Part shown: piece after piece, positions 4,639 to 17,656 of the stretch
How the letters are laid out: each line of letters starts with the position of its first letter
Numbering within the stretch: the stretch's first letter is position 1
Virus record (IMG/VR): IMGVR_UViG_3300011934_000017
Location: 1 to 64,000 of that record
Length of the DNA: 64,000 nt
Reading direction: 5' to 3' (one strand)
Program-made: the position numbers and the translations under genes
Notes under the pieces: model-generated
The model's database searches: none
What the model saw: the letters and a program-made list of their open reading frames with translations, nothing else
What the model was told of the DNA's origin: nothing

Positions 4639-4687
4639 TATGTAAATCGCGGTGTCTCAAGCCCGCTACTATACCATAGGAGGTATT

Positions 4688-6157
4688 ATGTTTTTTGTTT
4701 CTATTGCGGCAAAAGGAATCGATCCTGAGGCATTTGCGTGGCTAGTTTTTACTCGTTCCACGAAGATGCAACTCAAAGGGTACAATCAACGCCACACTCT
4801 AGTTCTGTCTAAGGGTGATATATTTGGTGTCCGCAGAACCCGCTCAAACACCTACCAGATGGTAAAATCTGATTCTCTCCATGTCCTGTATCGCAACGTG
4901 CCTGCCGAAACATACAATCGTATTCTGAAAAATTGCATTGCATACAAAGGCACTCCTATTACGGAAGAAGAGGTAGAAGATGGCTTTAGTAGGAGTCGGC
5001 GAGTCTCTACCACAGAATCCACTCAGAAGTCCAACAAGCGAACGGATGACTTTTATAAACCGGGTTCTCGCATAATTGAGAAGTACCAGATTGATCAGAA
5101 TAACTATCAGTGGCGCAAGCTGCGAGAAGCTAATATCAAAGTGCTGTCTAAGAAACAAGGCAAGATTAAAGGGCTACTTAACTCTGGCGATGTTATAGGT
5201 CTTCGATACTCTACACCTGCACGCGGTGGTTACGTTCTTCTTGACGGAAACAAACGAATCAACATATCTCATGAAATGTACTCCGAACTTGTTCATGCTT
5301 CCCGAGTGCTTCCTGATTCTCAGCAAAAAGATGATGTGGTCGATCTTGGAAGTGGTTTGTCTGATTCTGAAATAAAAGAAAAGATGCAGGAAGAGGCCAA
5401 AGTTGCCAAAGAGCGAAAAGCCAAGAATGCTCCTGCGCCGGTAGAGGAAGAGCCTATCGAAAAGCTGTATGATATAGGTGATCTTTCAGACGACGAGCTT
5501 CTGGAACAAAATACATTCAAAAAAGACAAACGCAATCGTAATCTACGGCGAATGGTAAGAAAGCTGTTGGAAGTACCGGAACAAGATGTTTGGGTAGACG
5601 AAGATGAAGCTAAAGAAAAGGACTTCGAGGATGAAGAGCTGGAAGATGTAGATGCTGAGTCGGAAGCTCCAGAAGAGTCTGAAGACTTTGAAGACGAAGA
5701 GGATAACGACGATGGACTGGACGATAATCTTTCCGATGACCTTCCTGATGATTCTGATAACGACGATTCTGACGGTGAGTTTGAAGACGAGGAAGACCTT
5801 GAAGATGAAGAAGACCCAGAAGAAGCCGAACGCAAAGAAAGTCGAGTAGTTGAAGAGCTGCAACCTGGAAACATTGTTCAAATCAAGAAAGGAACTAAGC
5901 GGAAGCTTGTTGTTATTGACGCTTCTCCTATGGAAAGGAATGAGAATTTAATAGAGTATATCCTGCATGATCCAACAGCCGACGAAGACGACCAAGACTT
6001 TAGCTTATATAGGCTGCGTCTGAACGTTAATACCACTTTTGCTAAGTTCGAAGAAAGTGCGGACCTTTTGGATGAAACATTCGATGACAAACAGTTAAAA
6101 GCAATACAGGACTCTATGGAATATGCTGACATTAAATCTATCTCTTTCGTCAAATAG
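4688..6157 (+). CDS. Hypothetical (likely virion) protein with beta-barrel-like segments and a long acidic linker
   Basis: Start moved to ATG 4688 (RBS aggagg); long D/E tract. Confidence 0.75.
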   Translation: MFFVSIAAKGIDPEAFAWLVFTRSTKMQLKGYNQRHTLVLSKGDIFGVRRTRSNTYQMVKSDSLHVLYRNVPAETYNRILKNCIAYKGTPITEEEVEDGFSRSRRVSTTESTQKSNKRTDDFYKPGSRIIEKYQIDQNNYQWRKLREANIKVLSKKQGKIKGLLNSGDVIGLRYSTPARGGYVLLDGNKRINISHEMYSELVHASRVLPDSQQKDDVVDLGSGLSDSEIKEKMQEEAKVAKERKAKNAPAPVEEEPIEKLYDIGDLSDDELLEQNTFKKDKRNRNLRRMVRKLLEVPEQDVWVDEDEAKEKDFEDEELEDVDAESEAPEESEDFEDEEDNDDGLDDNLSDDLPDDSDNDDSDGEFEDEEDLEDEEDPEEAERKESRVVEELQPGNIVQIKKGTKRKLVVIDASPMERNENLIEYILHDPTADEDDQDFSLYRLRLNVNTTFAKFEESADLLDETFDDKQLKAIQDSMEYADIKSISFVK

Positions 6158-6167
6158 GAGCGTTGTC

Positions 6168-8144
6168 GTGCCTCCTCGTCCTTCTTGGTTCAATCTACGT
6201 GCGATTAAAAAGAATCCGGCTGACTATGTGCAAGACCTAAATAAAAAAGAGTCGGTTGATCTTGCACAATATATGGATTATCGGTATCATGAAAAGAATA
6301 AGCCTGTCGTCGATGATGAAGTATACGACCTTCTTATCGATCATATCAAAGACAAGTATCCGAAGGCTGCTTACCTAAAGAAAGTCGGACACAAAGTAAC
6401 GACAAAAGGACGCAAAGAGGTCCAGCTTCCTGTTCACATGTCCTCACTGAGTAAGATTAAACCTTCTTCTACAGGGATTGAAAGTCATATACAAGGAAGC
6501 TTGGTCGTATCTGAAAAGCTGGACGGAATTAGTCTGCTGCTTGAATACAAGAACGGTGTTCCTTACGCTTGCTATACGCGGGGAAATGGCGTTCGAGGAC
6601 AAGATGTTTCTGGTGTGCTGTCTGCGCTAGACATTCCAAAACGTGTATCTGTCAAAGCGGAATTTTACGTTCGATGCGAGTTTATTATCAAGCGTAAATC
6701 GTTCACGGACAAACATGCCAGCTCTTCTGGAAAAGGTACGTACAAGACAAGTCGAAACATGGGTGGTGGTCTACTGACACGTAACGAACCTTCTTCTGCC
6801 GTTCGTGACTTTGATGTTGTAGCTTACGAAATACCTAAAGGCAAAGGTGCTGGTAAGCCTATTTCACAACAGCTTGCTGAACTGAAGCGCATGGGCTTTA
6901 GTGTTGTTCGACATAAGAAATATTCTGGTCTTACCGTAGATCGCCTGACTAAGATTCATGACAACGTTCGAGCCAAGTCTCCTTACGATGTTGATGGAAT
7001 TGTGGTAGCTCAAGATAAAGCGTATCGTGTATCGTCCAGTAATCCAAAACACGCGAAAGCATTCAAGGTCAATTCTCTTGAGGCAACCAAAATCGTCAAA
7101 GTGAAAGACATTGTTTGGAAGCGTTCTCGCCACGGCAAATGGATTCCTCGTGTTGTTGTTGATCCTGTTCAACTTGGTGGTGTTTCTGTGACGTCCTTTA
7201 CAGGGCATAGCTACTACTACATTCAAAACGGTTTCCGGTACCAAGATCGTAACAAGCAACTTCCTGTACGCCCGTTAAACGTAGGTGCAGAGATTCGCGT
7301 AGTGAGAAGTGGTGACGTTATTCCGTACATCATGGAAGTCGTTAAACCTGCGCGTAAACCCGCACAGCCTGATGTTGCATTCACGTTAGACAATACAGGC
7401 GTTCACGCTTTAGATATCGTAGAAAAAGGCGCCAAGCTCGACGACACTCAGAAAGTCCAGCGTATTGTCCACTTCTTTAGCGCTATGCAAATGAAAGGTA
7501 TTAAAAGCGGTATTGTGGAAAAGCTTTATGCTTCAGGCTTTAAAACCCTGCGTTCGATTCTACATGCTCCACCAGAAAAGCTTATGAAAGCTGAAGGTAT
7601 CCAACAAAAGACAGCCGAGAACATCGTTAAGACCGTTCAACTAGGTCTTGCTAAGAATGCGACGTTTGCCAATCTGGGTTATGCAAGTTCAATCTTCGGT
7701 GACAAGATAGGTAGAACGAAGCTTCAGGCCACAATCGACGAAATTCCGGATATTGTTCAACTGTCTACGACGCTCAGCCCTCTTCAGCTTCGAGATAGAA
7801 TAGCGGAAGTAGAAGGCATTAAAACTCAGGCTACCATCATTGCGAAACGATTGCCTAAGTTCATTCGCTTCTTGGAGCTTAATCGAATCAAGATCGGAAG
7901 TGAAGTTAAGCAGAAGAAACAAAGCAGCCGACTGGAAGGCATGAAGGTGCTGTTTACTTCCGTTCGTGATGACGACCTGCTTACCGCTATTCAGGCTAAC
8001 GGTGGTCAGAAAGCTAGTTCTGTTAAGTCTGCTACCCATCTTGTTATCAAGCCCGGTGCCTCTAACAAGAAGACAGATGAGGCTGAAGAGCTAGGAATCC
8101 CTATGCTCACCGTCGATGAATTCCGTAAGAAATTTAAACTTTAA
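6168..8144 (+). CDS. ligA: NAD-dependent DNA ligase
   Basis: SEKLDG adenylation motif, TRGNG, DGIVV, AFK, RSGDVIP, HhH repeats, C-terminal BRCT-like domain; GTG start at 6168 with RBS aggag. Confidence 0.93.
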   Translation: MPPRPSWFNLRAIKKNPADYVQDLNKKESVDLAQYMDYRYHEKNKPVVDDEVYDLLIDHIKDKYPKAAYLKKVGHKVTTKGRKEVQLPVHMSSLSKIKPSSTGIESHIQGSLVVSEKLDGISLLLEYKNGVPYACYTRGNGVRGQDVSGVLSALDIPKRVSVKAEFYVRCEFIIKRKSFTDKHASSSGKGTYKTSRNMGGGLLTRNEPSSAVRDFDVVAYEIPKGKGAGKPISQQLAELKRMGFSVVRHKKYSGLTVDRLTKIHDNVRAKSPYDVDGIVVAQDKAYRVSSSNPKHAKAFKVNSLEATKIVKVKDIVWKRSRHGKWIPRVVVDPVQLGGVSVTSFTGHSYYYIQNGFRYQDRNKQLPVRPLNVGAEIRVVRSGDVIPYIMEVVKPARKPAQPDVAFTLDNTGVHALDIVEKGAKLDDTQKVQRIVHFFSAMQMKGIKSGIVEKLYASGFKTLRSILHAPPEKLMKAEGIQQKTAENIVKTVQLGLAKNATFANLGYASSIFGDKIGRTKLQATIDEIPDIVQLSTTLSPLQLRDRIAEVEGIKTQATIIAKRLPKFIRFLELNRIKIGSEVKQKKQSSRLEGMKVLFTSVRDDDLLTAIQANGGQKASSVKSATHLVIKPGASNKKTDEAEELGIPMLTVDEFRKKFKL

Positions 8145-9290: not shown

Positions 9291-10868
9291 ATGGCCCACG
9301 TTACTTTAAGGCTGTTTGAATCGACAGCCATTTCTAAACCCAGTAGGATGCATTCAGACAAGAAAGCCAAGTCTAAAAAGCATATTGGTAATCGGTTTAA
9401 ACGATTGACCAAAGCTCAGTTTCTTGATCTGGCTACAAAAGAGCAGGCTCGATACCTTGATCACTTTCCTAAGTCTAGTCATAGAAAGCTAGTAGGTTCA
9501 AAAGGTAAGAAAGGTAAAGAACAGCCTGCGGTACAACGACGCAAAAACGCTAAGAAGGCCGAACCTGCAAAGCCGAAAGAGAAAGAAAAGCCTAAGAAAG
9601 AACGCATTAAAAAGCTTTCCCGCGAAGACTTTGATAGGCTTTCTAATAAGGAACAGAAGGCATACAAAAAGGCGTTTCCCAAGAACTCCTTTAAGGGAAA
9701 AAAGCATCACGTTGCCAAAAAGAAAAGCATAGTAGAGAAGAATAAGACGGGTGATTCAGGAGAGACCGTACTCACCGGTTCTCCAGATGCGAAGAAAAAG
9801 AAGAAAGCTGAAAAGAAAATACTAAAAGCAGGACGCGATAAAGCCAAGAGTGAACTTCGCCACAGTGTTACTCAAGAATCCGTAGATGCTATCAAAAGAA
9901 CCTCTCCCGGCGATCTTAGGGAAGCAAGCGAGAATCTTAAACGCAATAGAAACGCTAACGTCAAAGCAATAGAAGAAACCTTAAAAGGTGGTTCCGACTT
10001 TGATTCTTTTTCTTCTCAAGAGATAGATAAAATTCAAAGGAACTTGAAACAAGAGTCTGAGAAAGAAGACCCCGATCTTCCCGAAGAAACTATAAAGAAA
10101 GGAAAGAAACTGGCCGATCGATTGAAGCCGGATGCGCCTCAAGAGTTAACAGAAGATGAACTTCGCGTTATATCTGATATTCACCCTAAGCGCAAAAAGA
10201 AAGAGCGCTTCTGGCAGAAAGACTTGAAGGTACTCAAGGGTCTTGTCACAGGCGAGAAAGTAGAACCAGAAGGTAGAAGTAATGCGATGTTGGCGCTGGG
10301 TGTTGTAGCTCGCTATGCTTTAATTGCTGGTGCTGTTACGGCTGTTTCTATGGGCGCAGCGCCTGCCGCTTTGCATATAGCACAATCGCTGTTTGAACAG
10401 TGGGATTCCTTTAATGTTTCTGCTTCTACTGATCTTTTATCGGATGATGAAGAGAACGAGGAAGACGAAGAAACACGGAATACCATAGGTCTTGCTTATG
10501 ATGCTGTAGCCGACTATCTACAAAACGTGGATCATGAAGAGTTTGTACAGTCCATTGATAGCACGTTCCTTGAGTTTCGCGCAAAAGCTTCTAGCGATCC
10601 ATACCTAATGTCACTTTTGTTAAAAGACTTGTCGTTGGTTGAAGACTGTTGCGAGCTAAACGATGCGGGTGCTTTGGTGTTAGCTGAAGCTGACATAGTT
10701 ATGCAAAAGCTCCAACCTCTTTTGGAGGAAGCTGGCTTCAATCGCGTCAACGATATCTTCTATCGTGGAAATGACGCTGTTGGTGTTTATGCGTCTGGAC
10801 ACAGAAGTAAAATCCTTTCTCTTCCTTCTCCTTCCACTATTGTTGACGATATAATGGAGACACAATGA
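9291..10868 (+). CDS. Lys-rich putative internal head / DNA-binding protein with a hydrophobic segment
   Basis: Very basic N-terminal third; duplicated F..L...EQ..Y...FP motif; hydrophobic LALGVVARYALIAGAVTAV stretch. Confidence 0.65.
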   Translation: MAHVTLRLFESTAISKPSRMHSDKKAKSKKHIGNRFKRLTKAQFLDLATKEQARYLDHFPKSSHRKLVGSKGKKGKEQPAVQRRKNAKKAEPAKPKEKEKPKKERIKKLSREDFDRLSNKEQKAYKKAFPKNSFKGKKHHVAKKKSIVEKNKTGDSGETVLTGSPDAKKKKKAEKKILKAGRDKAKSELRHSVTQESVDAIKRTSPGDLREASENLKRNRNANVKAIEETLKGGSDFDSFSSQEIDKIQRNLKQESEKEDPDLPEETIKKGKKLADRLKPDAPQELTEDELRVISDIHPKRKKKERFWQKDLKVLKGLVTGEKVEPEGRSNAMLALGVVARYALIAGAVTAVSMGAAPAALHIAQSLFEQWDSFNVSASTDLLSDDEENEEDEETRNTIGLAYDAVADYLQNVDHEEFVQSIDSTFLEFRAKASSDPYLMSLLLKDLSLVEDCCELNDAGALVLAEADIVMQKLQPLLEEAGFNRVNDIFYRGNDAVGVYASGHRSKILSLPSPSTIVDDIMETQ

Positions 10869-11209
10869 GTAGAATATCCTATCGCTGTCTTCCTGAAGAA
10901 CGTGGAACCCCAATCTCAGAGAAGTCTTTTTGGCATGTTTATAAAGACGGAACTTGTATTGGCAAAATAGATACAGAAGGTGCTTCAACGATAAGCCCTA
11001 ATCTACGTATTTGGAATCCCGTTCTATTCGAGTCTGAGTTTGATCCGTTTGAGTTTCCTCATGCGGATAGTCGTGAAGGTATGACTGAAGCATTTGTAAC
11101 GACCAACGATGAACCTGAGTATGATCACCAGTTAGAGCTTCAACCTAACACGCTAATGACTCTTCATGAATCCAGAATGTGGATTCGAAATATAACTAGG
11201 AGTGAGTAA
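10865..11209 (+). CDS. Hypothetical protein
   Basis: ATGA overlap with the upstream gene; RBS ggag. Confidence 0.75.
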   Translation: MSRISYRCLPEERGTPISEKSFWHVYKDGTCIGKIDTEGASTISPNLRIWNPVLFESEFDPFEFPHADSREGMTEAFVTTNDEPEYDHQLELQPNTLMTLHESRMWIRNITRSE

Positions 11210-11242: not shown

Positions 11243-11986
11243 ATGGCTCTCATGCAATCAATCAGTTTTAGTATCGGTTCGAAGCCTACGGAGCTTCACG
11301 GTATAAGCAATAAGCGACGTGAGGTACGTCTAGGTAAGCAAGCTATAGGTGAAGAGCGCACTATCGACGCTAACCTATGGCTTCCCCGCGCTGCCGAGCA
11401 TTATCACATTAGTCCTAAGCTGAGTGACTATATTCTGGTGCCAGTACCTTCGCTTATTTCAGAGCTTCCCAATACCAATGGTGATGCTGTTACGAAAGAA
11501 GAGTTGATGCGTTTTCATCCAGACGTAGGTATGCTTGCTTATCAAACGTGGCGTGGAAAGCCTACGCATATTGAACATGCTAACAAGGATATCACACAGG
11601 CTAAAGGCATTATCTTTGATGTATTTTTGCGTCGTGTTGCTCCTCAGTACATGGGAGGTCACGTTAAAGTCGTTAAACTCTTGGGCTTTGATCGTACAAA
11701 AGACCCTGTACTGTGCCAAGCTATTCTGGATCGAAAGATCAATACCTACTCGCTTGGTATGTATTTCAAGTCTTATCAGTGTTCCCTCTGTGGAAATGTT
11801 GTTTCGCAAAATGGTGGTCATGCTTGTCAGCACACGCGCCCACGTCGAAAGACATACAAGGCCGCAGACGGTCGTTTAGTCTATCGTCAATGTCAGTCCA
11901 TTATGGGCTTCGAGACAAGCGCTGTTGCCGATCCCGCCTTCGTCTCGGCTAACAGCGATATCATTCTTAATCCTTCTGACCTGTAG
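11243..11986 (+). CDS. Prohead maturation protease (HK97/assemblin-like) with Zn-ribbon insert
   Basis: NxNGD, GKPTHIEH, YSLG (catalytic Ser candidate), CSLCG...CQH, FETSAVADPAF; sits upstream of scaffold and capsid genes. Confidence 0.75.
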   Translation: MALMQSISFSIGSKPTELHGISNKRREVRLGKQAIGEERTIDANLWLPRAAEHYHISPKLSDYILVPVPSLISELPNTNGDAVTKEELMRFHPDVGMLAYQTWRGKPTHIEHANKDITQAKGIIFDVFLRRVAPQYMGGHVKVVKLLGFDRTKDPVLCQAILDRKINTYSLGMYFKSYQCSLCGNVVSQNGGHACQHTRPRRKTYKAADGRLVYRQCQSIMGFETSAVADPAFVSANSDIILNPSDL

Positions 11987-11993
11987 GTGATCT

Positions 11994-12500
11994 ATGCGCC
12001 ACATGATAGCACTAGCTGATGCCAAGTGGGAAATCGGGCCGTACACAGGAAAGAATGGTATGTACTGTGCTGTTCAGCCTGATACGTTGTCTCTCCTCAC
12101 TCTGGTAGAACTGTGTAACGATCTAGGTGTTGTGTCTGATCCACGCAAGTTTCATTGCACGGTCATGTATAGCAAAGAACTTGCACCGGAACTTCCAAAA
12201 GGTTTAGACTTGACAGCAAAAGGCTACATTAATCATATTGAATGGTGGGCAGGGCATGATGAAAAAGGCTATTTAACTGCCTCTATTCGAAGCCCTGAGC
12301 TAGAGTCGCATCATGCTGTTCTAAAAGAGTTAGGTGCTAAACATTCCTACGATTCGTACAGCGCTCACGTAACCTTGACTTCTGGAGTTAAGTTTACAGG
12401 CGCTTTACGAAGGGATGTTATTGGTATCAACAATCAGTTATCTCGGCGTCCTATTCCTGTCGTGTTCGATAGATTCTCGATTAGCGACGTTAAGGACTGA
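11994..12500 (+). CDS. acb1: 2H phosphoesterase, T4 gp57B/Acb1-like anti-CBASS nuclease
   Basis: Two HxT motifs (KFHCTVMYSK, YSAHVTL); GMYCAV, LGAKHSYDSY and IPVVFDR parallel T4 gp57B motifs as I recall them. Confidence 0.75.
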   Translation: MRHMIALADAKWEIGPYTGKNGMYCAVQPDTLSLLTLVELCNDLGVVSDPRKFHCTVMYSKELAPELPKGLDLTAKGYINHIEWWAGHDEKGYLTASIRSPELESHHAVLKELGAKHSYDSYSAHVTLTSGVKFTGALRRDVIGINNQLSRRPIPVVFDRFSISDVKD

Positions 12501-12529
12501 TTTTTTGTATTTTGTAATTTCTTCTCAAC

Positions 12530-12570
12530 GTGACCGGATCGTGTTACGTTACGCGATCTGTGGAGGTCGC
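12530..12570 (+). promoter_or_regulatory. Structured 5' leader of the scaffold gene
   Basis: gtgacc/ggtcgc outer stem, ggatcgtgt/acgcgatct inner stem, 5-nt bulge. Confidence 0.45.
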
Positions 12571-12599
12571 AATCACCAACCTTCATAATAGGAACCGCT

Positions 12600-14618
12600 A
12601 TGAAAAAGTCCAGCGCTACTCTGCGGGGTATCGTGGTCGCAGGTGATTCCCGCGAAGAGGCGGAAAATCACTATCGTGCGGTAGCTACCGGCCTTTCAGT
12701 TCAAGCACTTCAGGACGAGGAACAATCGTTCGTTATCCTGAGCAATGCGGACTCTGAATTGTCGCTCATGAATCCTCTAACGGGGGATATGAGTTTGGTA
12801 GAAGCCAGCGACCTGAATACAGATAGCTTTGAATTCCTTGCCAGTGGCGAAGATGAAAAAGTAAAAGTGTTCTACACCCTGTGCTCTGACGGCTGTGGTA
12901 GTCATATCATTGCCGATGACAGCGAACTCATGGTTCGTTGCCCTGTATGTGCCTCTCAGCTTCAAGACCTGGATGCTGAAGACATTGCAGAATACGAAAA
13001 CGATATTGCCGAATCTTCTGACGATTCTGAATTGGATTATGATGAAGAAGATGATGCCGATGATACCGTCGAATCTTCCTCCGCAATGATCGTTGCCGCC
13101 GATTCCAAAGAAGCTGCTGTTGAAGCGTTTCGTAAGTTGGCTGAAGGCGAAGACTCTCCTTCTGTTTATAACTGCGAATCTTCTCTGGTTGCTACGGCAT
13201 CTGATTCCGACTTCCAATTCAGCCCGTTTACAGGCGAAGCGGCCGAGGAAGAAGACAGCGTAGAGTCATTCGAAGTAGAAGCAAGTTCGGAAGAAGGGTA
13301 CGATGCTCACTACTACGTGTGTGCTTCTGAAGAATGTGGTTCTCATGTTATCGCTTCTAACGAAGATCCTGTATTCTGTCCTGTTTGTGCTTCCGGTCTG
13401 ATTGAGCCTGAAAATCTTTTTGACGCTCAAGCTTCAGATGACGACGAGGAAGATGACGACGAGGAAGATGACGACGATCTTCTGGATGGTCTTGATGACG
13501 AAGATGACGGTCTCGATGATGACGATGAAGCCACCGCTTCTGACGACGACGATCCTTGTTGGGAAGGCTACGAACAACGCGGTATGAAGATGAAAAATGG
13601 GAAGCAAGTTCCCAACTGCGTTGAATCGGGTGGCGACGAGGAAGACGAGGACGAAGACGAAGACCTCGATGACGATGAAGACCTCGACGAACTGGAAGAA
13701 GATGAAGACGACGAGGATGAGGATTTTGACGATAAAAATTCCATGTCCGTTTCGTCTGTACGTATCTTCGATGAAGGTGAGCTAGAGTCCGTATCTACCG
13801 ATCTTCTGTCGTTGGCGAGCGCCTCTTCTGGCGGTCTGGAAGACTCTTATCTGTCTGTTGCATTCGCAGGTGAGCTTGCTGGTACCCCAACCTGGCTTGC
13901 ACTGTACAACGGTCAAATCGTTGCTACCTCTACACCTGAAACAGCGAAAGGTGTTGAGCACAACGTATTCAATTCCGACGTGTACGCTAACCTGGTTCAT
14001 GCTTCTGCCAAAGAAAATGGCGTGAAAGAGGCTCTTGATGAACTCGGATTCAAACCGATTCAAGCTTCTGTGGACGTCGATTCTTATATCCAGGAAGAAG
14101 TCGCTTCTCGCGTAGAAGCGGGCGTTTCTTCTGTTCGTGATAATTTCGAACAGTCCAGCAGCGATTATGCTGCTCGCTTTGAGGCGGCCCTTGCTACCGC
14201 AGCTACTGGTGTAAACAAGAACTTCTTTGACGATGTTAAAAACCCTGTCAAATCGGCTCTTGCCTCTGCCATGAATAGCGTAGGTGTTCGGAACGCAGAT
14301 CGGCTTGTAGCTCAAGCTTTTGCCAAGCACAACGATGAATATCTGAAAGGCTTGGTCGCCAAGGCTTGTGAAATCATGGAATACGATGTATCTGTCCAGA
14401 ATCAACTGACTAAGGCAGTAGCATCTACTTCTCATGAACAGTCGGTAACCGCTTCTTCTGATTCCAGTGATTTGGCTATCGGTCGTCCTGTTCACTCAGA
14501 GCAGCCGTCAGATCAAAGTCAGAATGTGCGTCAAGAAGCCGTTGCGTCTGCGGACTCGAAGCCCAAGGTAAATTTGGACACTGTTCTTTCAACACTCGGC
14601 CGCCGGGGCCGCAACTGA
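12600..14618 (+). CDS. Prohead core/scaffold protein with two Zn-ribbon modules and acidic linkers
   Basis: Two C..C-GSH...CPVC modules; long D/E tracts; helical C-terminus; lies between protease and capsid genes. Confidence 0.7.
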   Translation: MKKSSATLRGIVVAGDSREEAENHYRAVATGLSVQALQDEEQSFVILSNADSELSLMNPLTGDMSLVEASDLNTDSFEFLASGEDEKVKVFYTLCSDGCGSHIIADDSELMVRCPVCASQLQDLDAEDIAEYENDIAESSDDSELDYDEEDDADDTVESSSAMIVAADSKEAAVEAFRKLAEGEDSPSVYNCESSLVATASDSDFQFSPFTGEAAEEEDSVESFEVEASSEEGYDAHYYVCASEECGSHVIASNEDPVFCPVCASGLIEPENLFDAQASDDDEEDDDEEDDDDLLDGLDDEDDGLDDDDEATASDDDDPCWEGYEQRGMKMKNGKQVPNCVESGGDEEDEDEDEDLDDDEDLDELEEDEDDEDEDFDDKNSMSVSSVRIFDEGELESVSTDLLSLASASSGGLEDSYLSVAFAGELAGTPTWLALYNGQIVATSTPETAKGVEHNVFNSDVYANLVHASAKENGVKEALDELGFKPIQASVDVDSYIQEEVASRVEAGVSSVRDNFEQSSSDYAARFEAALATAATGVNKNFFDDVKNPVKSALASAMNSVGVRNADRLVAQAFAKHNDEYLKGLVAKACEIMEYDVSVQNQLTKAVASTSHEQSVTASSDSSDLAIGRPVHSEQPSDQSQNVRQEAVASADSKPKVNLDTVLSTLGRRGRN

Positions 14619-14638: not shown

Positions 14639-15325
14639 ATGATCCAGCAAAAATACACTCGTGTTTTTAGCACTGAGCACCGCCCTGTCGAAACGGGCGT
14701 TATTATTGAAGACGAGGGTATGGCTCTTGTTTTCGTTCGTGAAGGTGATCGTACTGTTGTTCGTCCTTCTACTGGTGCATCCGGTGAAAAACTTGCAGGC
14801 TTCTCGCTTGCTCGTAACTGCCCACCGCAATTCCTTCCGTTCGTTCAAGAAGGTATCGTTGAAGGCGCAGAGCTTGAACTGCCGCGTACTCCGATCGCCG
14901 GTCAAATCCTGGTTCGCATTGACGGTGAAGCTGTCACCGTAGCTGCTTCTGCTGACGCTCCTTCAGCCGCTGATACCGTCAGCCTCGAAGACAACGTTAT
15001 TCGTTTCCACGGCTCACACGCCGGTAAAGAAATGATCGTGCAAATGATGTTCGAGCCGACTGTTACTGAAGCTCGCCAGTATAACGGTGACGCACCTGTT
15101 GGTGGCCTACCGTCTTCTGCACAAGGTGTTATCGGTGTCATTCGTAAGGGTGACATTGCGACTACCTACTACGACGCATCTGCTGATTGGTCAAGCGCCC
15201 TTTCGTGCAAACTTGGTCCGGATGGTATCCTGACTACTGAAGGTCCTGGTACAACTCCGAGCGATATCACTATTCTCTCGACGCCTACTGCGGCAAATCC
15301 TTTGCTAGTTATCAACATCGACTAA
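14639..15325 (+). CDS. Head structural/decoration protein
   Basis: Immediately upstream of the MCP; beta-rich; RBS ggag. Confidence 0.6.
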   Translation: MIQQKYTRVFSTEHRPVETGVIIEDEGMALVFVREGDRTVVRPSTGASGEKLAGFSLARNCPPQFLPFVQEGIVEGAELELPRTPIAGQILVRIDGEAVTVAASADAPSAADTVSLEDNVIRFHGSHAGKEMIVQMMFEPTVTEARQYNGDAPVGGLPSSAQGVIGVIRKGDIATTYYDASADWSSALSCKLGPDGILTTEGPGTTPSDITILSTPTAANPLLVINID

Positions 15326-15326
15326 T

Positions 15327-15357
15327 CAATCTACTCTAAACAAAGAGTAGTTGTTTT
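15327..15357 (+). promoter_or_regulatory. Hairpin upstream of the MCP (attenuator or mRNA-stabilising stem)
   Basis: caatctactct-aaacaa-agagtagttg followed by tttt. Confidence 0.45.
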
Positions 15358-15380
15358 CTGACATAACGGAGATATTATCC

Positions 15381-16481
15381 ATGACAAGTCCGTACAAAGG
15401 CGCCAAGATGGTATTGGCCAACGGAAACCCGATCGAAGACATTCGTTTTGGCAACTCTAACCAACGCGCTCTCGACGGTAAAACTGGTGAGTTTAACGCT
15501 AACGACAAAGGCGAATTGACCCGCGCAATTTCACAGCTAATGGAAGCCGCAGCTTCTGGCCAAATCGTTGAATCCAACGAAGCGACCATGTCTGCTTCTG
15601 AAGAACGTGAAATGCGTCGTGAAGTTCTGGCCTCTGCTCTTAACGATGCTTCCGGTCAAGAATGGGCAGCACTGGGCTCCGGCCTTGCTCGCCAGATCAG
15701 TGAAGAAACTTCGCGTCAAGGCTTCCTGCGTCGTATCTCGCAAGGCCAAACGCTGCGCCAGGGTGAAGTACCGCGTGTTCCGATGCCCGCACACGACAGC
15801 ATTGCAATCGTCGCTACTTCAGCTTCCTCTGTCGGCTACCAGACTATTCGCCAGCGCGTATTTACTCCTGACGAATTTGAAATTCAGTCCAACGTTCGTG
15901 TTGAAAACCTGGATATCGAGCAAGTTAACGGTGACCTACTTGAGCACGCCTATAACGACGGCCTGCAAGCAGTAATGGTTGCTGAAGATAAGCTCTGGAA
16001 AAATGCTGCCGATAAGACTGTCGGTGTCGTGAACGACCTGGAATACATCGCTGGTGAACTGACTACCCGTAACCTGGGTAATCTGCGTCAAGCTGTAGCA
16101 CGTTGGAACCTGCCGGTTAACACTGCCATTATCAGTAACGACTACTGGGCAGATATCATTGGTAGCCAAGACTTCGCTACATTCCTGGATCCGATCACCA
16201 AGTATGATCTTGCTCTGAACGGTCAGATCGGTACTCTGGTTGGTATGCAACTGTTGACTGATGCTTTCCGTCAGCCGAACCAGAAAGTTCTGGGCGCTGG
16301 TGAAATCTACGTTGTTGCCAGCCCTGAGAACCACGCTGCTTACTCTACTCGTGGTGGCATTCGTTCTACTCCGACTTCTGGCGCCAACTCTGGTAACAGC
16401 ACACGCGGCTGGTTCCTGACGGAGCCGTTCAGTTTTGTTTTGGCTAACAGCCGTTCTGTTGCTAAAGGCAAGCGGGTATAA
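15381..16481 (+). CDS. Major capsid protein
   Basis: Start moved to ATG 15381 (RBS ggag); HK97-like size and features (RQGFLRR, TPDEFEI, GQIGTLVGMQLLTDAFR); strong codon bias; position after the scaffold. Confidence 0.85.
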   Translation: MTSPYKGAKMVLANGNPIEDIRFGNSNQRALDGKTGEFNANDKGELTRAISQLMEAAASGQIVESNEATMSASEEREMRREVLASALNDASGQEWAALGSGLARQISEETSRQGFLRRISQGQTLRQGEVPRVPMPAHDSIAIVATSASSVGYQTIRQRVFTPDEFEIQSNVRVENLDIEQVNGDLLEHAYNDGLQAVMVAEDKLWKNAADKTVGVVNDLEYIAGELTTRNLGNLRQAVARWNLPVNTAIISNDYWADIIGSQDFATFLDPITKYDLALNGQIGTLVGMQLLTDAFRQPNQKVLGAGEIYVVASPENHAAYSTRGGIRSTPTSGANSGNSTRGWFLTEPFSFVLANSRSVAKGKRV

Positions 16482-16612: not shown

Positions 16613-17656
16613 ATGCGAAGCGATTTTTATGTCTATGCACTCCTCGATCCGAGGAAACCCGGTAAGTATCGTTACGGTAAACTAAAGCTTGATTACGAAC
16701 CGTTCTACGTTGGTAAAGGCTGTAAGAAACGAAGCCACTCCCACACTTCGTCTATTAAGAAATCTATTGTTAGAGGAGTTTTAAAGCATTCCTATAATAA
16801 ATGGAAAGAAGGTAAGATTAGAAAGATTTTAGAATCTGGTGAAACTCCTATTGTGCGAATAATTAAGCGGAATCAGATCGAGTCCGAAGCTTTTAGACTA
16901 GAGACTAAAGCAATCCGTCTCATAGGCCGTAAAGGCAAAGGTCCTCTTACTAATCTTACAGACGGCGGTGAAGGTACTTCTGGTAGAATTGCCTCCAAAG
17001 AGACAAGAAGCAAACATACGGCTAATAACATTAAAATGTGGGCTGATTTATCCGAGGCCGATTATATCGCTAGATGTTTGTCTATTTCAAAAGGACATTC
17101 GCGTAGAACGCCTGAAGAACGTGAGGCTCTTCGCGCAAGGTACCGAGAGATTCAAACGAACCTGCCTGAAGAGATAGCGACCAAACGTAGTAAGCGTATT
17201 CGTAAAGCACTTAGAAAATACCGTAAGAGTATGACCGAAGAACAACGTTTAGCCGAATCCGCAACACTGTCTCGCGTCCAGAAAGCAATACGCGCACGGG
17301 AAACGGATGAAGCTAAAGTTGCCAGAAGCGCCGCTATCAAACGCGGATATGCTTCAAAGGATCGAAAGCAGATAGAGCAAAAGAACAGCAAAATAGCTGC
17401 CAAGATTCGCCAACAACACGCAACGGCTTCAGAGTATGATAAGCGTATGCGAAGCTTTAGTGTAATGGTAGGTGTTATGCTTAGGAACTACACGGATAAA
17501 GGCTTGATAGAACAGTCTAATGTTGATCAGATTAAACAACGCCTGCGTAGTTCCGCACAAAAGTTTTATTCTGCTGAATGTAATTTAACTCGCAAGCCCA
17601 ATGTTCTCCGTGAGAAAGCAAGGGTTGTTATTTTACAGTATGGAAGTGCAGCGTAG
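16613..17656 (+). mobile_element. Free-standing GIY-YIG (COG3680/LEM-3-like) homing endonuclease
   Basis: YVYALLDPR...PFYVGKG..R...H, E..LE...I, LTNLTDGGEGTSG, then basic helical repeats; inserted between the MCP and the next head gene. Confidence 0.8.

What the first reader, a model, noticed from the sequence alone, without database searches (positions are those of the whole stretch)
11994..12500. Acb1-like anti-CBASS nuclease wedged between the prohead protease and scaffold genes
Seen: a 168-aa 2H protein with HCT and HVT motifs. Known (recalled): T4 gp57B/Acb1 degrades CBASS cyclic nucleotides, and its GLYV..HSTI.YS..LGA.HDFDDY.PHITL..IPVVLDR pattern is paralleled here throughout. Some CBASS systems are reported to be triggered by late events such as prohead protease activity or capsid proteins. 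Inference: the counter-defence is co-transcribed with the likely trigger genes, and might be packaged in the head.
Basis: partly seen in the sequence, partly recalled or inferred. Interest (0 to 1): 0.7.

Follow-up and report, generated by a model that had tools for sequence, protein, structure and literature searches.

The report
Acb1-type nuclease beside prohead protease
A 220-kb jumbo phage from a stromatolite metagenome carries a fast-evolving relative of the phage T4 anti-CBASS enzyme Acb1 directly after its head-maturation protease, the kind of enzyme recently shown to trigger CBASS; the enzyme family is known, but this conserved gene placement appears unreported.

Summary
Window 11994-12500 (+) encodes a 168-aa 2H protein with H54-C-T56 and H125-V-T127.

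It is a member of the Acb1 family. Pfam PF23474 scores 59.9 bits (cut-off 27) and no LigT family matches. A high-confidence model (pLDDT 92.9) matches the Burkholderia phage BCSR5 phosphodiesterase "PDE-9" (Z 19.8) and phage FBB1 Acb1 (Z 16.8), well above generic 2H enzymes (Z 11.4 or less).

Like PDE-9, it has a conserved N-terminal extension and lacks the C-terminal tryptophan of T4's lid.

The upstream gene has the T4 gp21 prohead-protease fold (Z 10.3). The nuclease ATG follows its stop codon by 7 nt.

The order protease, nuclease, acidic scaffold-like gene recurs in 10 of 14 sampled genomes of this jumbo-phage lineage. That includes 5 of 5 relatives chosen by their protease alone. The nuclease's dN is about four times the protease's.

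Co-expression with the protease is plausible but unproven. A strongly conserved spacer separates the nuclease from the scaffold-like gene. Packaging into the head has no support.

Verdict: a new member of a known family, with an interesting lineage-specific gene linkage.

The parts
11994..12500 (+). Acb1-family 2H phosphodiesterase gene (168 aa, 18.8 kDa, pI 6.7)
   Evidence: ORF. Pfam PF23474 59.9 bits against cut-off 27. PDB and fold matches. Single copy in the 220,237-bp genome.
11994..12056 (+). N-terminal extension (residues 1-21, includes W12 and Y17-T18-G19), the predicted lid
   Evidence: Absent from T4 Acb1 (9 residues before the G-x-Y motif, against 21 here) and present in BCSR5 PDE-9 (16), whose residues 1-15 are the experimentally defined lid. 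Most of ~150 homologues carry 16-25 residues here. Model residues 14-20 align to the open-lid PDE-9 structure. pLDDT is below 50 for residues 1-8 and about 87 for residues 11-20.
12153..12161 (+). First catalytic HxT motif (H54-C55-T56)
   Evidence: Corresponds to T4 H44/T46. H is present in 149 of 150 and T in 150 of 150 homologues.
12366..12374 (+). Second catalytic HxT motif (H125-V126-T127)
   Evidence: Corresponds to T4 H113/T115. H is present in 149 of 150 and T in 145 of 150 homologues.
11985..11992 (+). Shine-Dalgarno-like AGGTGATC overlapping the protease stop codon (TAG 11984-11986)
   Evidence: Read directly. A purine-rich equivalent sits at the same place in L003, L008 and L011. 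Translational coupling is an inference.
11243..11986 (+). Prohead (head-maturation) protease with the T4 gp21 / herpesvirus assemblin fold
   Evidence: PHROG 18299 E 3e-92. Model pLDDT 86.3. In an exhaustive search of 48,161 chains the only match with Z above 8 is T4 gp21 (5JBL, Z 10.3), followed by VZV and HCMV proteases (Z 6.9 and 5.5).
12501..12599 (+). Near-invariant spacer: a T-rich box (12501-12520) followed by a hairpin, GATCGTG-loop-CGCGATC
   Evidence: 91% column identity among window, L003, L008 and L009, although synonymous sites of the flanking genes are saturated. A weaker version lies upstream of the homologous gene in L011, PaBG, JA13 and Yoloswag. Unique in the window. No Rfam match.
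12600..14618 (+). 672-aa acidic scaffold-like protein (pI 4.05, 25% Asp+Glu, two CPVC motifs)
   Evidence: PHROG 20988 E 1e-120, a family named 'ATPase'; Pfam finds no ATPase domain in it. Composition. The C-terminal ~290 residues are 34% identical to PaBG gp82. gp82 is not among PaBG's virion bands although its neighbours gp80 and gp81 are. The scaffold role is inferred.
14639..15325 (+). Virion structural protein (context)
   Evidence: PHROG 16710 E 6e-81. Its PaBG counterpart gp81 was detected in virions.
15351..16481 (+). Major capsid protein (context)
   Evidence: PHROG 2522 E 6e-104. 67% identical to the PaBG major capsid protein.

Best explanation
The gene encodes a metal-independent 2H phosphodiesterase of the Acb1 family. 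Its role is counter-defence. It opens cyclic oligonucleotide alarm signals made by host CBASS-type systems, most likely 3'3'-cGAMP and related adenosine-containing di- and trinucleotides. The chemistry is acid-base catalysis on the H54/T56/H125/T127 tetrad through a 2',3'-cyclic phosphate intermediate.

Aromatic residues Y24, W85 and Y119 are expected to stack on the bases. The conserved 21-residue N-terminal extension is expected to close over the substrate as a lid, as in BCSR5 PDE-9. This replaces the Trp-bearing C-terminal lid of T4 and FBB1 Acb1.

The gene is the last in a tightly packed late run (525-aa gene, 114-aa gene, prohead protease, nuclease). The enzyme is therefore probably made together with the gp21-type protease, the class of protein shown to switch on many CBASS cyclases.

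Shown here: family membership, fold, motif conservation, conserved gene order and purifying selection. Inferred: substrate range, lid role, co-transcription, and any adaptive value of the linkage.
For: Family and fold:
- Pfam Acb1 is above its cut-off and no LigT family is reported up to E = 1.
- PDB sequence hits with E below 0.01 are Acb1-type enzymes only.
- The model has pLDDT 92.9 and pTM 0.86.
- Foldseek gives E 2e-12 to BCSR5 PDE and 1e-8 to FBB1 Acb1, against 1e-4 or worse for other 2H enzymes.
- VIA gives Z 19.8, 17.9 and 16.8, against 11.4 or less for other 2H enzymes.

Residue conservation in ~150 homologues:
- The catalytic tetrad is essentially invariant.
- T4 Y12, W74 and F107 correspond to Y24 (140/150), W85 (128/150) and F or Y at 119 (143/150).

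Published biochemistry:
- T4 Acb1, PDE-8 and PDE-9 (structural group 3) all degrade 3'3'-cGAMP.
- The founding mechanism is described in PMC9117128.

Selection:
- dN/dS is about 0.06 against the 80%-identical orthologue.
- dN is 0.386 for the nuclease and 0.093 for the protease against the same genome.

Context:
- The gap to the protease is 7-12 nt, with an SD-like sequence at its stop codon, in the four closest genomes.
- The nuclease lies between protease and scaffold-like gene in 10 of 14 lineage genomes sampled, including 5 of 5 chosen by protease alone.
- The protease has the gp21 fold.
- Prohead proteases activate CBASS cyclases.
- T4 Acb1 activity starts at about 15 min, and gp21-dependent activation appears from 14 min.
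Against: - No enzymology exists for this protein or any close relative. The nearest characterised enzyme, PDE-9, is only about 24-28% identical.
- 2H enzymes of similar fold differ in substrate, and some groups cleaved nothing on an 18-compound panel.
- The Pfam match covers model positions 1-111 of 144 only.
- The lid Trp (T4 W147) is absent, and the adenine-contacting residue (T4 E141) could not be mapped unambiguously.
- The host is unknown because the source is a stromatolite metagenome. Whether the host has CBASS is therefore unknown.
- There are no RNA data, so co-transcription is untested.
Confidence: 0.78

Rival explanations
1. The enzyme is an Acb1-fold phosphodiesterase whose real target is another signal, not CBASS: for example type III CRISPR cyclic oligoadenylates, 2'-5'-linked nucleotides, or a still unknown messenger.
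For: Viral 2H enzymes show group-specific substrate ranges. Some broad ones also cut type III CRISPR signals, and some cut nothing on the tested panel. The protein is divergent from every assayed enzyme. Hobbs et al. noted that cAAA cleavage could also serve against type III CRISPR.
Against: Its structural neighbours are exactly the group-3 enzymes, and all three assayed members degrade 3'3'-cGAMP. The T4 base-stacking residues are conserved.
Confidence: 0.15
2. It is a housekeeping LigT-like 2',3'-cyclic phosphodiesterase or 2'-5' RNA ligase acting on RNA ends, as many database records annotate its relatives ('RNA ligase').
For: PHROG 755 and many GenBank records are named 'RNA ligase'. The 2H fold is shared with LigT.
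Against: No hit to PF02834 or PF13563 is reported up to E = 1. LigT structures score Z about 10.6 against 17-20 for Acb1-type enzymes. T4 57B, which carries the same 'RNA ligase' label, was shown experimentally to be Acb1. No RNA-repair partners such as a kinase-phosphatase or RNA ligase were identified among the neighbouring genes scanned.
Confidence: 0.05
3. The enzyme is packaged into the capsid and injected with the DNA. Its N-terminus would act as a capsid-targeting peptide processed by the adjacent protease.
For: The gene sits within the head-morphogenesis genes. T4 57B neighbours the internal-protein gene ipI. Jumbo phages package many proteins (general knowledge).
Against: The N-terminal segment is conserved across the family and corresponds to the functional lid of PDE-9. 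The only Glu in it (E13) is not conserved in the syntenic orthologues L011 and L027, and it does not fit the I/L-x-E motif of gp21-type proteases. PaBG gp228 is not among the 14 identified virion bands, though that survey is shallow. CBASS signalling starts late, when newly made enzyme is available.
Confidence: 0.06
4. The position next to the protease is only inherited synteny: one old insertion into a permissive gap of the head module, with no functional coupling to the protease.
For: The adjacency is confined to one lineage. T4, BCSR5, L012 and five IMG/VR loci carry family members elsewhere. The gap also holds unrelated accessory genes: KMPT-N proteins in JA13, Yoloswag and L029, and small ORFs in L026-L029, PaBG and NCTB. 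T4 achieves matched timing without adjacency.
Against: The nuclease persists in the slot down to 52-56% protease identity while other occupants come and go. In PaBG a rearrangement left it with the protease rather than with the scaffold and capsid genes. The stop-start junction with an SD-like sequence is conserved. None of this proves selection for linkage.
Confidence: 0.55

Closest known systems
2H PDE-9, phosphodiesterase of Burkholderia jumbo phage BCSR5 (PDB 9Q2G / 9Q2Y; Doherty et al., bioRxiv 10.1101/2025.08.21.671373)
   Same: Best sequence hit in the PDB (E 6e-10) and best structural hit (Z 19.8 and 17.9, TM 0.79). Similar length (165 against 168 aa). Same HxT/HxT tetrad. Both have an N-terminal extension before the G-x-Y strand, and both lack a Trp in the last ten residues. 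Both come from jumbo phages and sit at the end of a structural-gene block.
   Different: Identity is only about 24-28%. The extension here is 5 residues longer and carries the W12 and Y-T-G motifs that PDE-9 lacks. PDE-9 follows tail genes, not a protease. PDE-9's sparing of 2'3'-c-di-AMP, which lets it evade Panoptes, cannot be assumed here.
T4 gp57B / Acb1 and Erwinia phage FBB1 Acb1 (PDB 7T26 / 7T27; Hobbs et al. 2022, PMC9117128)
   Same: Same Pfam family, same fold (Z 16.8, rmsd 1.8-1.9 over 132-133 residues), same catalytic tetrad, and conserved counterparts of Y12, W74 and F107. Shares an acidic D-[ILV]-K motif at the C-terminus.
   Different: T4 has only 9 residues before the G-x-Y motif. 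Its lid is the C-terminal segment 145-152 with W147, and no Trp exists there in this protein. This protein has a helix at residues 136-151 that the compact T4 and FBB1 enzymes appear to lack, judged from about 15 unaligned model residues; this is an inference. The T4 gene lies between 57A and ipI, far from gene 21.
PaBG_00228, annotated 'putative RNA ligase LigT', of Pseudomonas jumbo phage PaBG
   Same: Closest homologue in a cultured phage (34% identity, E 4e-26). Also Pfam Acb1. Lies downstream of the orthologous prohead protease in the same ligase, glycosyltransferase, protease module.
   Different: One extra 133-aa ORF separates it from the protease. In PaBG the scaffold-like and capsid genes have moved about 130 kb away. 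It does not group as the nearest branch in a poorly resolved tree. It has never been assayed.
LigT / 2',3'-cyclic nucleotide phosphodiesterases (E. coli LigT 5LDI, plant CPDase 1JH6)
   Same: The 2H superfamily fold and the HxT/HxT chemistry.
   Different: Much weaker structural match (Z 10-11.4). No Pfam match is reported. Those enzymes are larger, with different substrate-binding elements.

Membership tests
Acb1 (Pfam PF23474, anti-CBASS 2H nuclease) | Scores above the family's curated Pfam cut-off | tested here: met
   59.9 bits against a cut-off of 27, E 3e-16, residues 21-131 on model positions 1-111 of 144. Same result from the whole-genome scan.
Acb1 (Pfam PF23474, anti-CBASS 2H nuclease) | Compact 2H fold with the HxT/HxT catalytic tetrad (T4 H44, T46, H113, T115) | tested here: met
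   H54, T56, H125 and T127 are present and essentially invariant in about 150 homologues. Model pLDDT 92.9.
Acb1 (Pfam PF23474, anti-CBASS 2H nuclease) | Nearest structural relatives are Acb1-type enzymes rather than other 2H branches | tested here: met
   Z 19.8, 17.9 and 16.8 for BCSR5 PDE and FBB1 Acb1, then a drop to 11.4 (plant CPDase) and 10.6 (LigT). Foldseek shows the same ranking.
Acb1 (Pfam PF23474, anti-CBASS 2H nuclease) | Base-stacking aromatic residues in the core (T4 Y12, W74, F107) | tested here: met
   Y24, W85 and Y119 occupy the aligned columns. Conservation is 140/150, 128/150 and 143/150 (F or Y).
Acb1 (Pfam PF23474, anti-CBASS 2H nuclease) | C-terminal lid (T4 residues 145-152) with stacking W147 | tested here: not met
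   There is no Trp in the last ten residues, and only 8 of 150 homologues have one. A D-V-K tail resembling T4's D-L-K remains. PDE-9 also lacks this lid and still degrades 3'3'-cGAMP, so this feature defines the T4 subtype, not the activity.
Acb1 (Pfam PF23474, anti-CBASS 2H nuclease) | Acidic residue contacting adenine N6 (T4 E141) | tested here: inconclusive
   Two alignments place E141 opposite R152 or opposite S164/D165. D165 is conserved in 109 of 150 homologues.
Acb1 (Pfam PF23474, anti-CBASS 2H nuclease) | [quoted passage not shown] | not testable with these tools
   Needs enzyme assays and plaque assays. The ligand co-folding job was not run by the tool.
N-terminal-lid subtype of Acb1-like enzymes (BCSR5 PDE-9 type) | An N-terminal segment before the first core strand that closes over the active site | tested here: inconclusive
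   A conserved 21-residue extension is present, and model residues 14-20 align to the open-lid form 9Q2Y. Its closing over substrate is inferred by analogy. pLDDT is below 50 for residues 1-8.
LigT / 2'-5' RNA ligase families (PF02834, PF13563) | Match to the family profiles | tested here: not met
   Neither family is reported up to E = 1.
Capsid-packaged internal proteins (T4 IP / Alt type) | N-terminal targeting peptide ending in a conserved prohead-protease cleavage site, and presence in virions | tested here: not met
   No I/L-x-E site in residues 1-21, and E13 is not conserved in L011 and L027. PaBG gp228 is not among 14 virion bands, though that survey is shallow. Deep proteomics could not be done here.
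T4 gp21 / herpesvirus assemblin prohead proteases (for the upstream gene 11243-11986) | Assemblin-like fold and a position within the head module | tested here: met
   Z 10.3 to 5JBL over 139 residues, the only Z above 8 among 48,161 chains, then VZV and HCMV proteases. PHROG 18299. Invariant Ser and His residues in 61 homologues. The catalytic triad was not mapped.

The most novel reading that the evidence does not exclude
In this clade of jumbo phages the CBASS trigger (a gp21-type prohead protease) and its antidote (the Acb1-type nuclease) form a selected two-gene module. The stop-start junction ties nuclease synthesis in time and amount to protease synthesis. The short variable gap between protease and scaffold-like gene would then be a small anti-defence island, whose other small ORFs of unknown function (PaBG_00227-like proteins, 102-130-aa ORFs, KMPT-N proteins) are further counter-defence genes.
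Probability: 0.25. Interest if true: 0.65.

Novelty: new member of a known kind. Interest (0 to 1): 0.45.

Why it matters
The enzyme family is known, so the protein itself is an addition, not a discovery. Three things give it value.

1. It belongs to a large, mostly metagenomic branch: 461 clusters at 50% identity, most with the N-terminal extension. Only one member of the N-terminal-lid type, PDE-9, has been studied. This protein offers a second, divergent test case for how lid and core set substrate choice, including whether Panoptes is tripped.

2. Its fixed place right behind a gp21-fold prohead protease gives a natural system to test the 2026 finding that phage proteases switch on CBASS. 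The question is whether phages couple the antidote to the trigger.

3. The same gap holds other unknown small genes in relatives. These are reasonable candidates for new counter-defence functions.

Tried and rejected
- Nucleotide search of the 8-kb region against GenBank phages found nothing. Relatives had to be found at protein level.
- A ligand co-fold (protein plus 3'3'-cGAMP) was submitted, but the tool did not fold it and says it must not be used as evidence.
- Model coordinates are not exposed to scripts. Lid and active-site distances, and the E141/W147 correspondence, could not be measured.
It was repeated without them.
- A scan of viral contigs with the 72-sequence alignment failed for lack of conserved words. 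A 10-sequence alignment returned only 5 loci, none with the protease nearby.
- The family tree of 150 sequences is poorly resolved and its careful search did not finish. It was used only to confirm the tight clade around the window protein.
- I tested whether PDE-9's upstream neighbour in BCSR5 is a protease. It is not.
- I tested whether the slot genes of NCTB, JA13 and Yoloswag are hidden 2H enzymes. They are not.
- The sigma-70 promoter and terminator scan showed nothing meaningful at the protease-nuclease junction.
- The spacer has no Rfam match, only a weak folding z-score (-1.84), and no second copy in the window.
- Sequencing-run search found only DNA runs from stromatolite and mat metagenomes, so read-based transcript evidence was impossible.
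- dN/dS is only indicative because dS is saturated.
- The protease has no sequence-level match in PDB, Pfam or NCBIfam. Only the fold search identified it.

Full report
**Observation.** The two 2H motifs are H54-C55-T56 and H125-V126-T127. The similarity is statistically solid:
- Pfam Acb1 (PF23474): 59.9 bits against a curated cut-off of 27.
- PHROG 755: E 1e-26.
- Solved Acb1-type chains: E 6e-10 and 7e-6.
- T4 57B by tblastn: 31% identity, E 5e-7.

**Source.** The window is the first 64 kb of a complete, terminally repeated virus record of 220,237 bp. It was assembled from a stromatolite metagenome. Its major capsid protein is 67% identical, and its protease 52% identical, to those of Pseudomonas jumbo phage PaBG. 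Lu11, HRDY3, phage NCTB and the Dickeya and Erwinia jumbo phages are more distant kin. The host is unknown.

**What the protein is.** Pfam reports no LigT family up to E = 1. A model built from 72 homologues has mean pLDDT 92.9 and pTM 0.86. Two aligners give the same ranking:

| Structure | Foldseek E | VIA Z |
|---|---|---|
| BCSR5 phosphodiesterase, open lid (9Q2Y) | 2e-12 | 19.8 |
| BCSR5 phosphodiesterase, closed lid (9Q2G) | 2.8e-11 | 17.9 |
| FBB1 Acb1 (7T26/7T27) | about 1e-8 | 16.8 |
| Plant CPDase (1JH6) | 5.2e-4 | 11.4 |
| E. coli LigT | 1.4e-2 or worse | 10.6 |

An exhaustive profile-free search found 461 representative clusters at E 1e-3 or better. Across about 150 of them the catalytic tetrad is essentially invariant. 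The three core base-stacking residues of T4 Acb1 (Y12, W74, F107) correspond to Y24, W85 and Y119, which are conserved in 140, 128 and 143 of 150. I therefore file the protein as a member of the Acb1 family.

**Which kind of Acb1.** The 9Q2G/9Q2Y structures are "2H PDE-9" of Doherty et al. (bioRxiv 10.1101/2025.08.21.671373).
- That enzyme degrades 3'3'-cGAMP but only poorly cleaves 2'3'-c-di-AMP, so it does not set off the Panoptes system.
- Its lid is the N-terminal 15 residues, not the C-terminal segment used by T4 and FBB1 Acb1.
- The window protein has 21 residues before the G-x-Y strand. T4 has 9 and PDE-9 has 16. Most family members have 16-25.
- The extension begins with a conserved hydrophobic segment and carries W12 and a Y-T-G motif.
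- The protein has no Trp near its C-terminus, and only 8 of 150 homologues do.
- The tail keeps a D-V-K motif like T4's terminal D-L-K. One syntenic orthologue (L028) even has a T4-like W..EDLR.

Two alignments of the C-terminal 30 residues to T4 are possible, and I could not read the model coordinates. The counterpart of T4 E141 therefore stays open. My reading is an N-terminal-lid enzyme of the PDE-9 type. That is an inference from architecture, not a demonstrated property.

**The neighbours.**
- *Upstream gene (11243-11986).* It has no sequence match in Pfam, NCBIfam or the PDB. Its model (pLDDT 86.3), compared with all 48,161 representative chains, has one strong match: the T4 capsid assembly protease gp21 (Z 10.3, 139 residues). 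Herpesvirus assemblins follow.
- *Downstream gene (12600-14618).* It encodes a 672-aa protein with pI 4.05, 25% Asp+Glu and two CPVC motifs. Its C-terminal half is homologous to PaBG gp82. gp82 lies next to the capsid gene but is not among the 14 identified PaBG virion bands, while gp80 and gp81 are. This fits a scaffold but does not prove it.

**Linkage to the protease.** The nuclease ATG lies 7 nt after the protease stop codon. An AGGTGATC sequence overlaps that stop, and the scan calls no terminator-like site in the junction. The same tight junction (9-12 nt, purine-rich) occurs in L003, L008 and L011. As an independent test I picked five relatives by their protease alone, at 76, 72, 68, 60 and 56% identity. 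All five carry a PF23474 gene between the protease and the scaffold-like gene, sometimes with one to three extra small ORFs.

Tally over the 14 lineage genomes sampled:
- In 10 the nuclease is in the slot: the window, L003, L008, L011, L025, L026, L027, L028, L029 and PaBG.
- JA13 and Yoloswag have a KMPT-N-domain protein there instead.
- NCTB has unrelated small genes there.
- In L012 the nuclease lies about 5 kb upstream of the protease.

Outside the lineage the family sits elsewhere. In T4 it lies between 57A and ipI. In BCSR5 it lies after tail genes. Five IMG/VR loci have no protease nearby. In PaBG a rearrangement has separated protease and nuclease from the scaffold and capsid genes, and the nuclease stayed with the protease.

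The nuclease evolves fast but under constraint. dN is 0.386 against 0.093 for the protease versus the same genome. dN/dS is about 0.06 against the closest orthologue, with dS saturated.

The premise is now published:
- Hobbs and Kranzusch (PMC12991175) show that T4 gp21 and other proteases activate many CBASS cyclases by cutting an activation loop, from about 14 min of infection.
- Hobbs et al. 2022 saw Acb1 activity from about 15 min.

Co-production of nuclease and protease in this phage is therefore a sensible idea, and the gene junction supports it. There are no RNA data.

Two corrections are needed.
1. The 99-nt spacer after the nuclease is almost identical among genomes whose synonymous sites are saturated. 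A weaker form of it precedes the scaffold-like gene even in PaBG, JA13 and Yoloswag. It therefore looks like that gene's own control region. The nuclease is better described as the last gene of the protease unit than as part of one unit with scaffold and capsid.
2. Nothing supports packaging. The N-terminus is a conserved lid-like segment without a conserved cleavage site. PaBG's limited virion proteome does not list the homologue. A late-acting signal does not require an injected enzyme.

**Verdict.** This is a real gene and a new, divergent member of the known Acb1 family, of the N-terminal-lid type. It most likely degrades CBASS-type cyclic oligonucleotides (confidence about 0.78). The protein is ordinary for a phage specialist in 2026. 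The conserved placement behind a gp21-fold protease in a whole clade of jumbo phages was not found in the literature I searched. It could be adaptive or merely inherited, and I rate adaptive coupling at about 0.25.

Noticed in passing
window 12501-12599: A 99-nt non-coding spacer is about 91-100% identical among window, L003, L008 and L009, although synonymous sites of the flanking genes are saturated. It holds a T-rich box and a hairpin whose stem is kept while the loop differs. A weaker version precedes the homologous scaffold-like gene in L011, PaBG, JA13 and Yoloswag. It is unique in the window and has no Rfam match. Its function (promoter, operator or 5' UTR) is unknown.
   Followed up: partly
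L026:5542-5913, L027:4751-5143, L028:4786-5160 / 5692-6078 / 6068-6376, L029:4779-5309 / 5907-6260, L001:6537-6938 (PaBG_00227): The gap between protease and scaffold-like gene behaves as a small variable island. Besides the nuclease it holds 102-176-aa ORFs of unknown function that differ between relatives. Only L026_123 and L028_102 are detectably related to each other. They are possible further counter-defence genes.
   Followed up: partly
window 4652-6157; L004:6783-7829; L005:6747-7829; L029:4779-5309: KMPT-N-domain proteins (PF20294) occupy the slot after the protease in Dickeya JA13, Erwinia Yoloswag and L029. In the window a KMPT-N protein lies upstream of the DNA ligase instead. Its role is unknown.
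   Followed up: no
window 16613-17656: A 347-aa LEM-3-like GIY-YIG endonuclease gene (PF22945, 39.5 bits) sits directly after the major capsid gene. It is absent at the same place in the 80-93%-identical relative L003. This looks like a mobile homing-endonuclease insertion.
   Followed up: partly
window 11243-11986 (residues C180, C183, C195, H197): The gp21-fold protease carries an invariant C-x2-C ... C-x-H cluster in all 61 aligned homologues, which suggests a zinc-binding insert. Several GenBank records label this protein 'endolysin', which the fold search contradicts.
   Followed up: partly
window 12600-14618: The 672-aa acidic protein is annotated 'ATPase' (PHROG 20988, Dickeya and Erwinia phages) or '60S ribosomal-like protein L2-A' (PaBG). 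Pfam finds no ATPase domain in it. It has a long Asp/Glu-rich middle part, two CPVC motifs and a conserved C-terminal ~290 residues. These annotations look wrong.
   Followed up: partly
L012:3109-6525; L018, L019, L021: In several more distant phages the Acb1-family gene lies within 1-4 kb of an NAD-dependent DNA ligase gene. In this lineage the ligase is a few kb upstream of the protease anyway, so this may only reflect shared genome layout.
   Followed up: no
window 9291-11209: The two genes that precede the protease in the same tight run are a 525-aa Lys-rich, then acidic protein and a 114-aa protein (PHROG 31356). They are conserved in order across the lineage and have no known function. 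They may be prohead core components.
   Followed up: no
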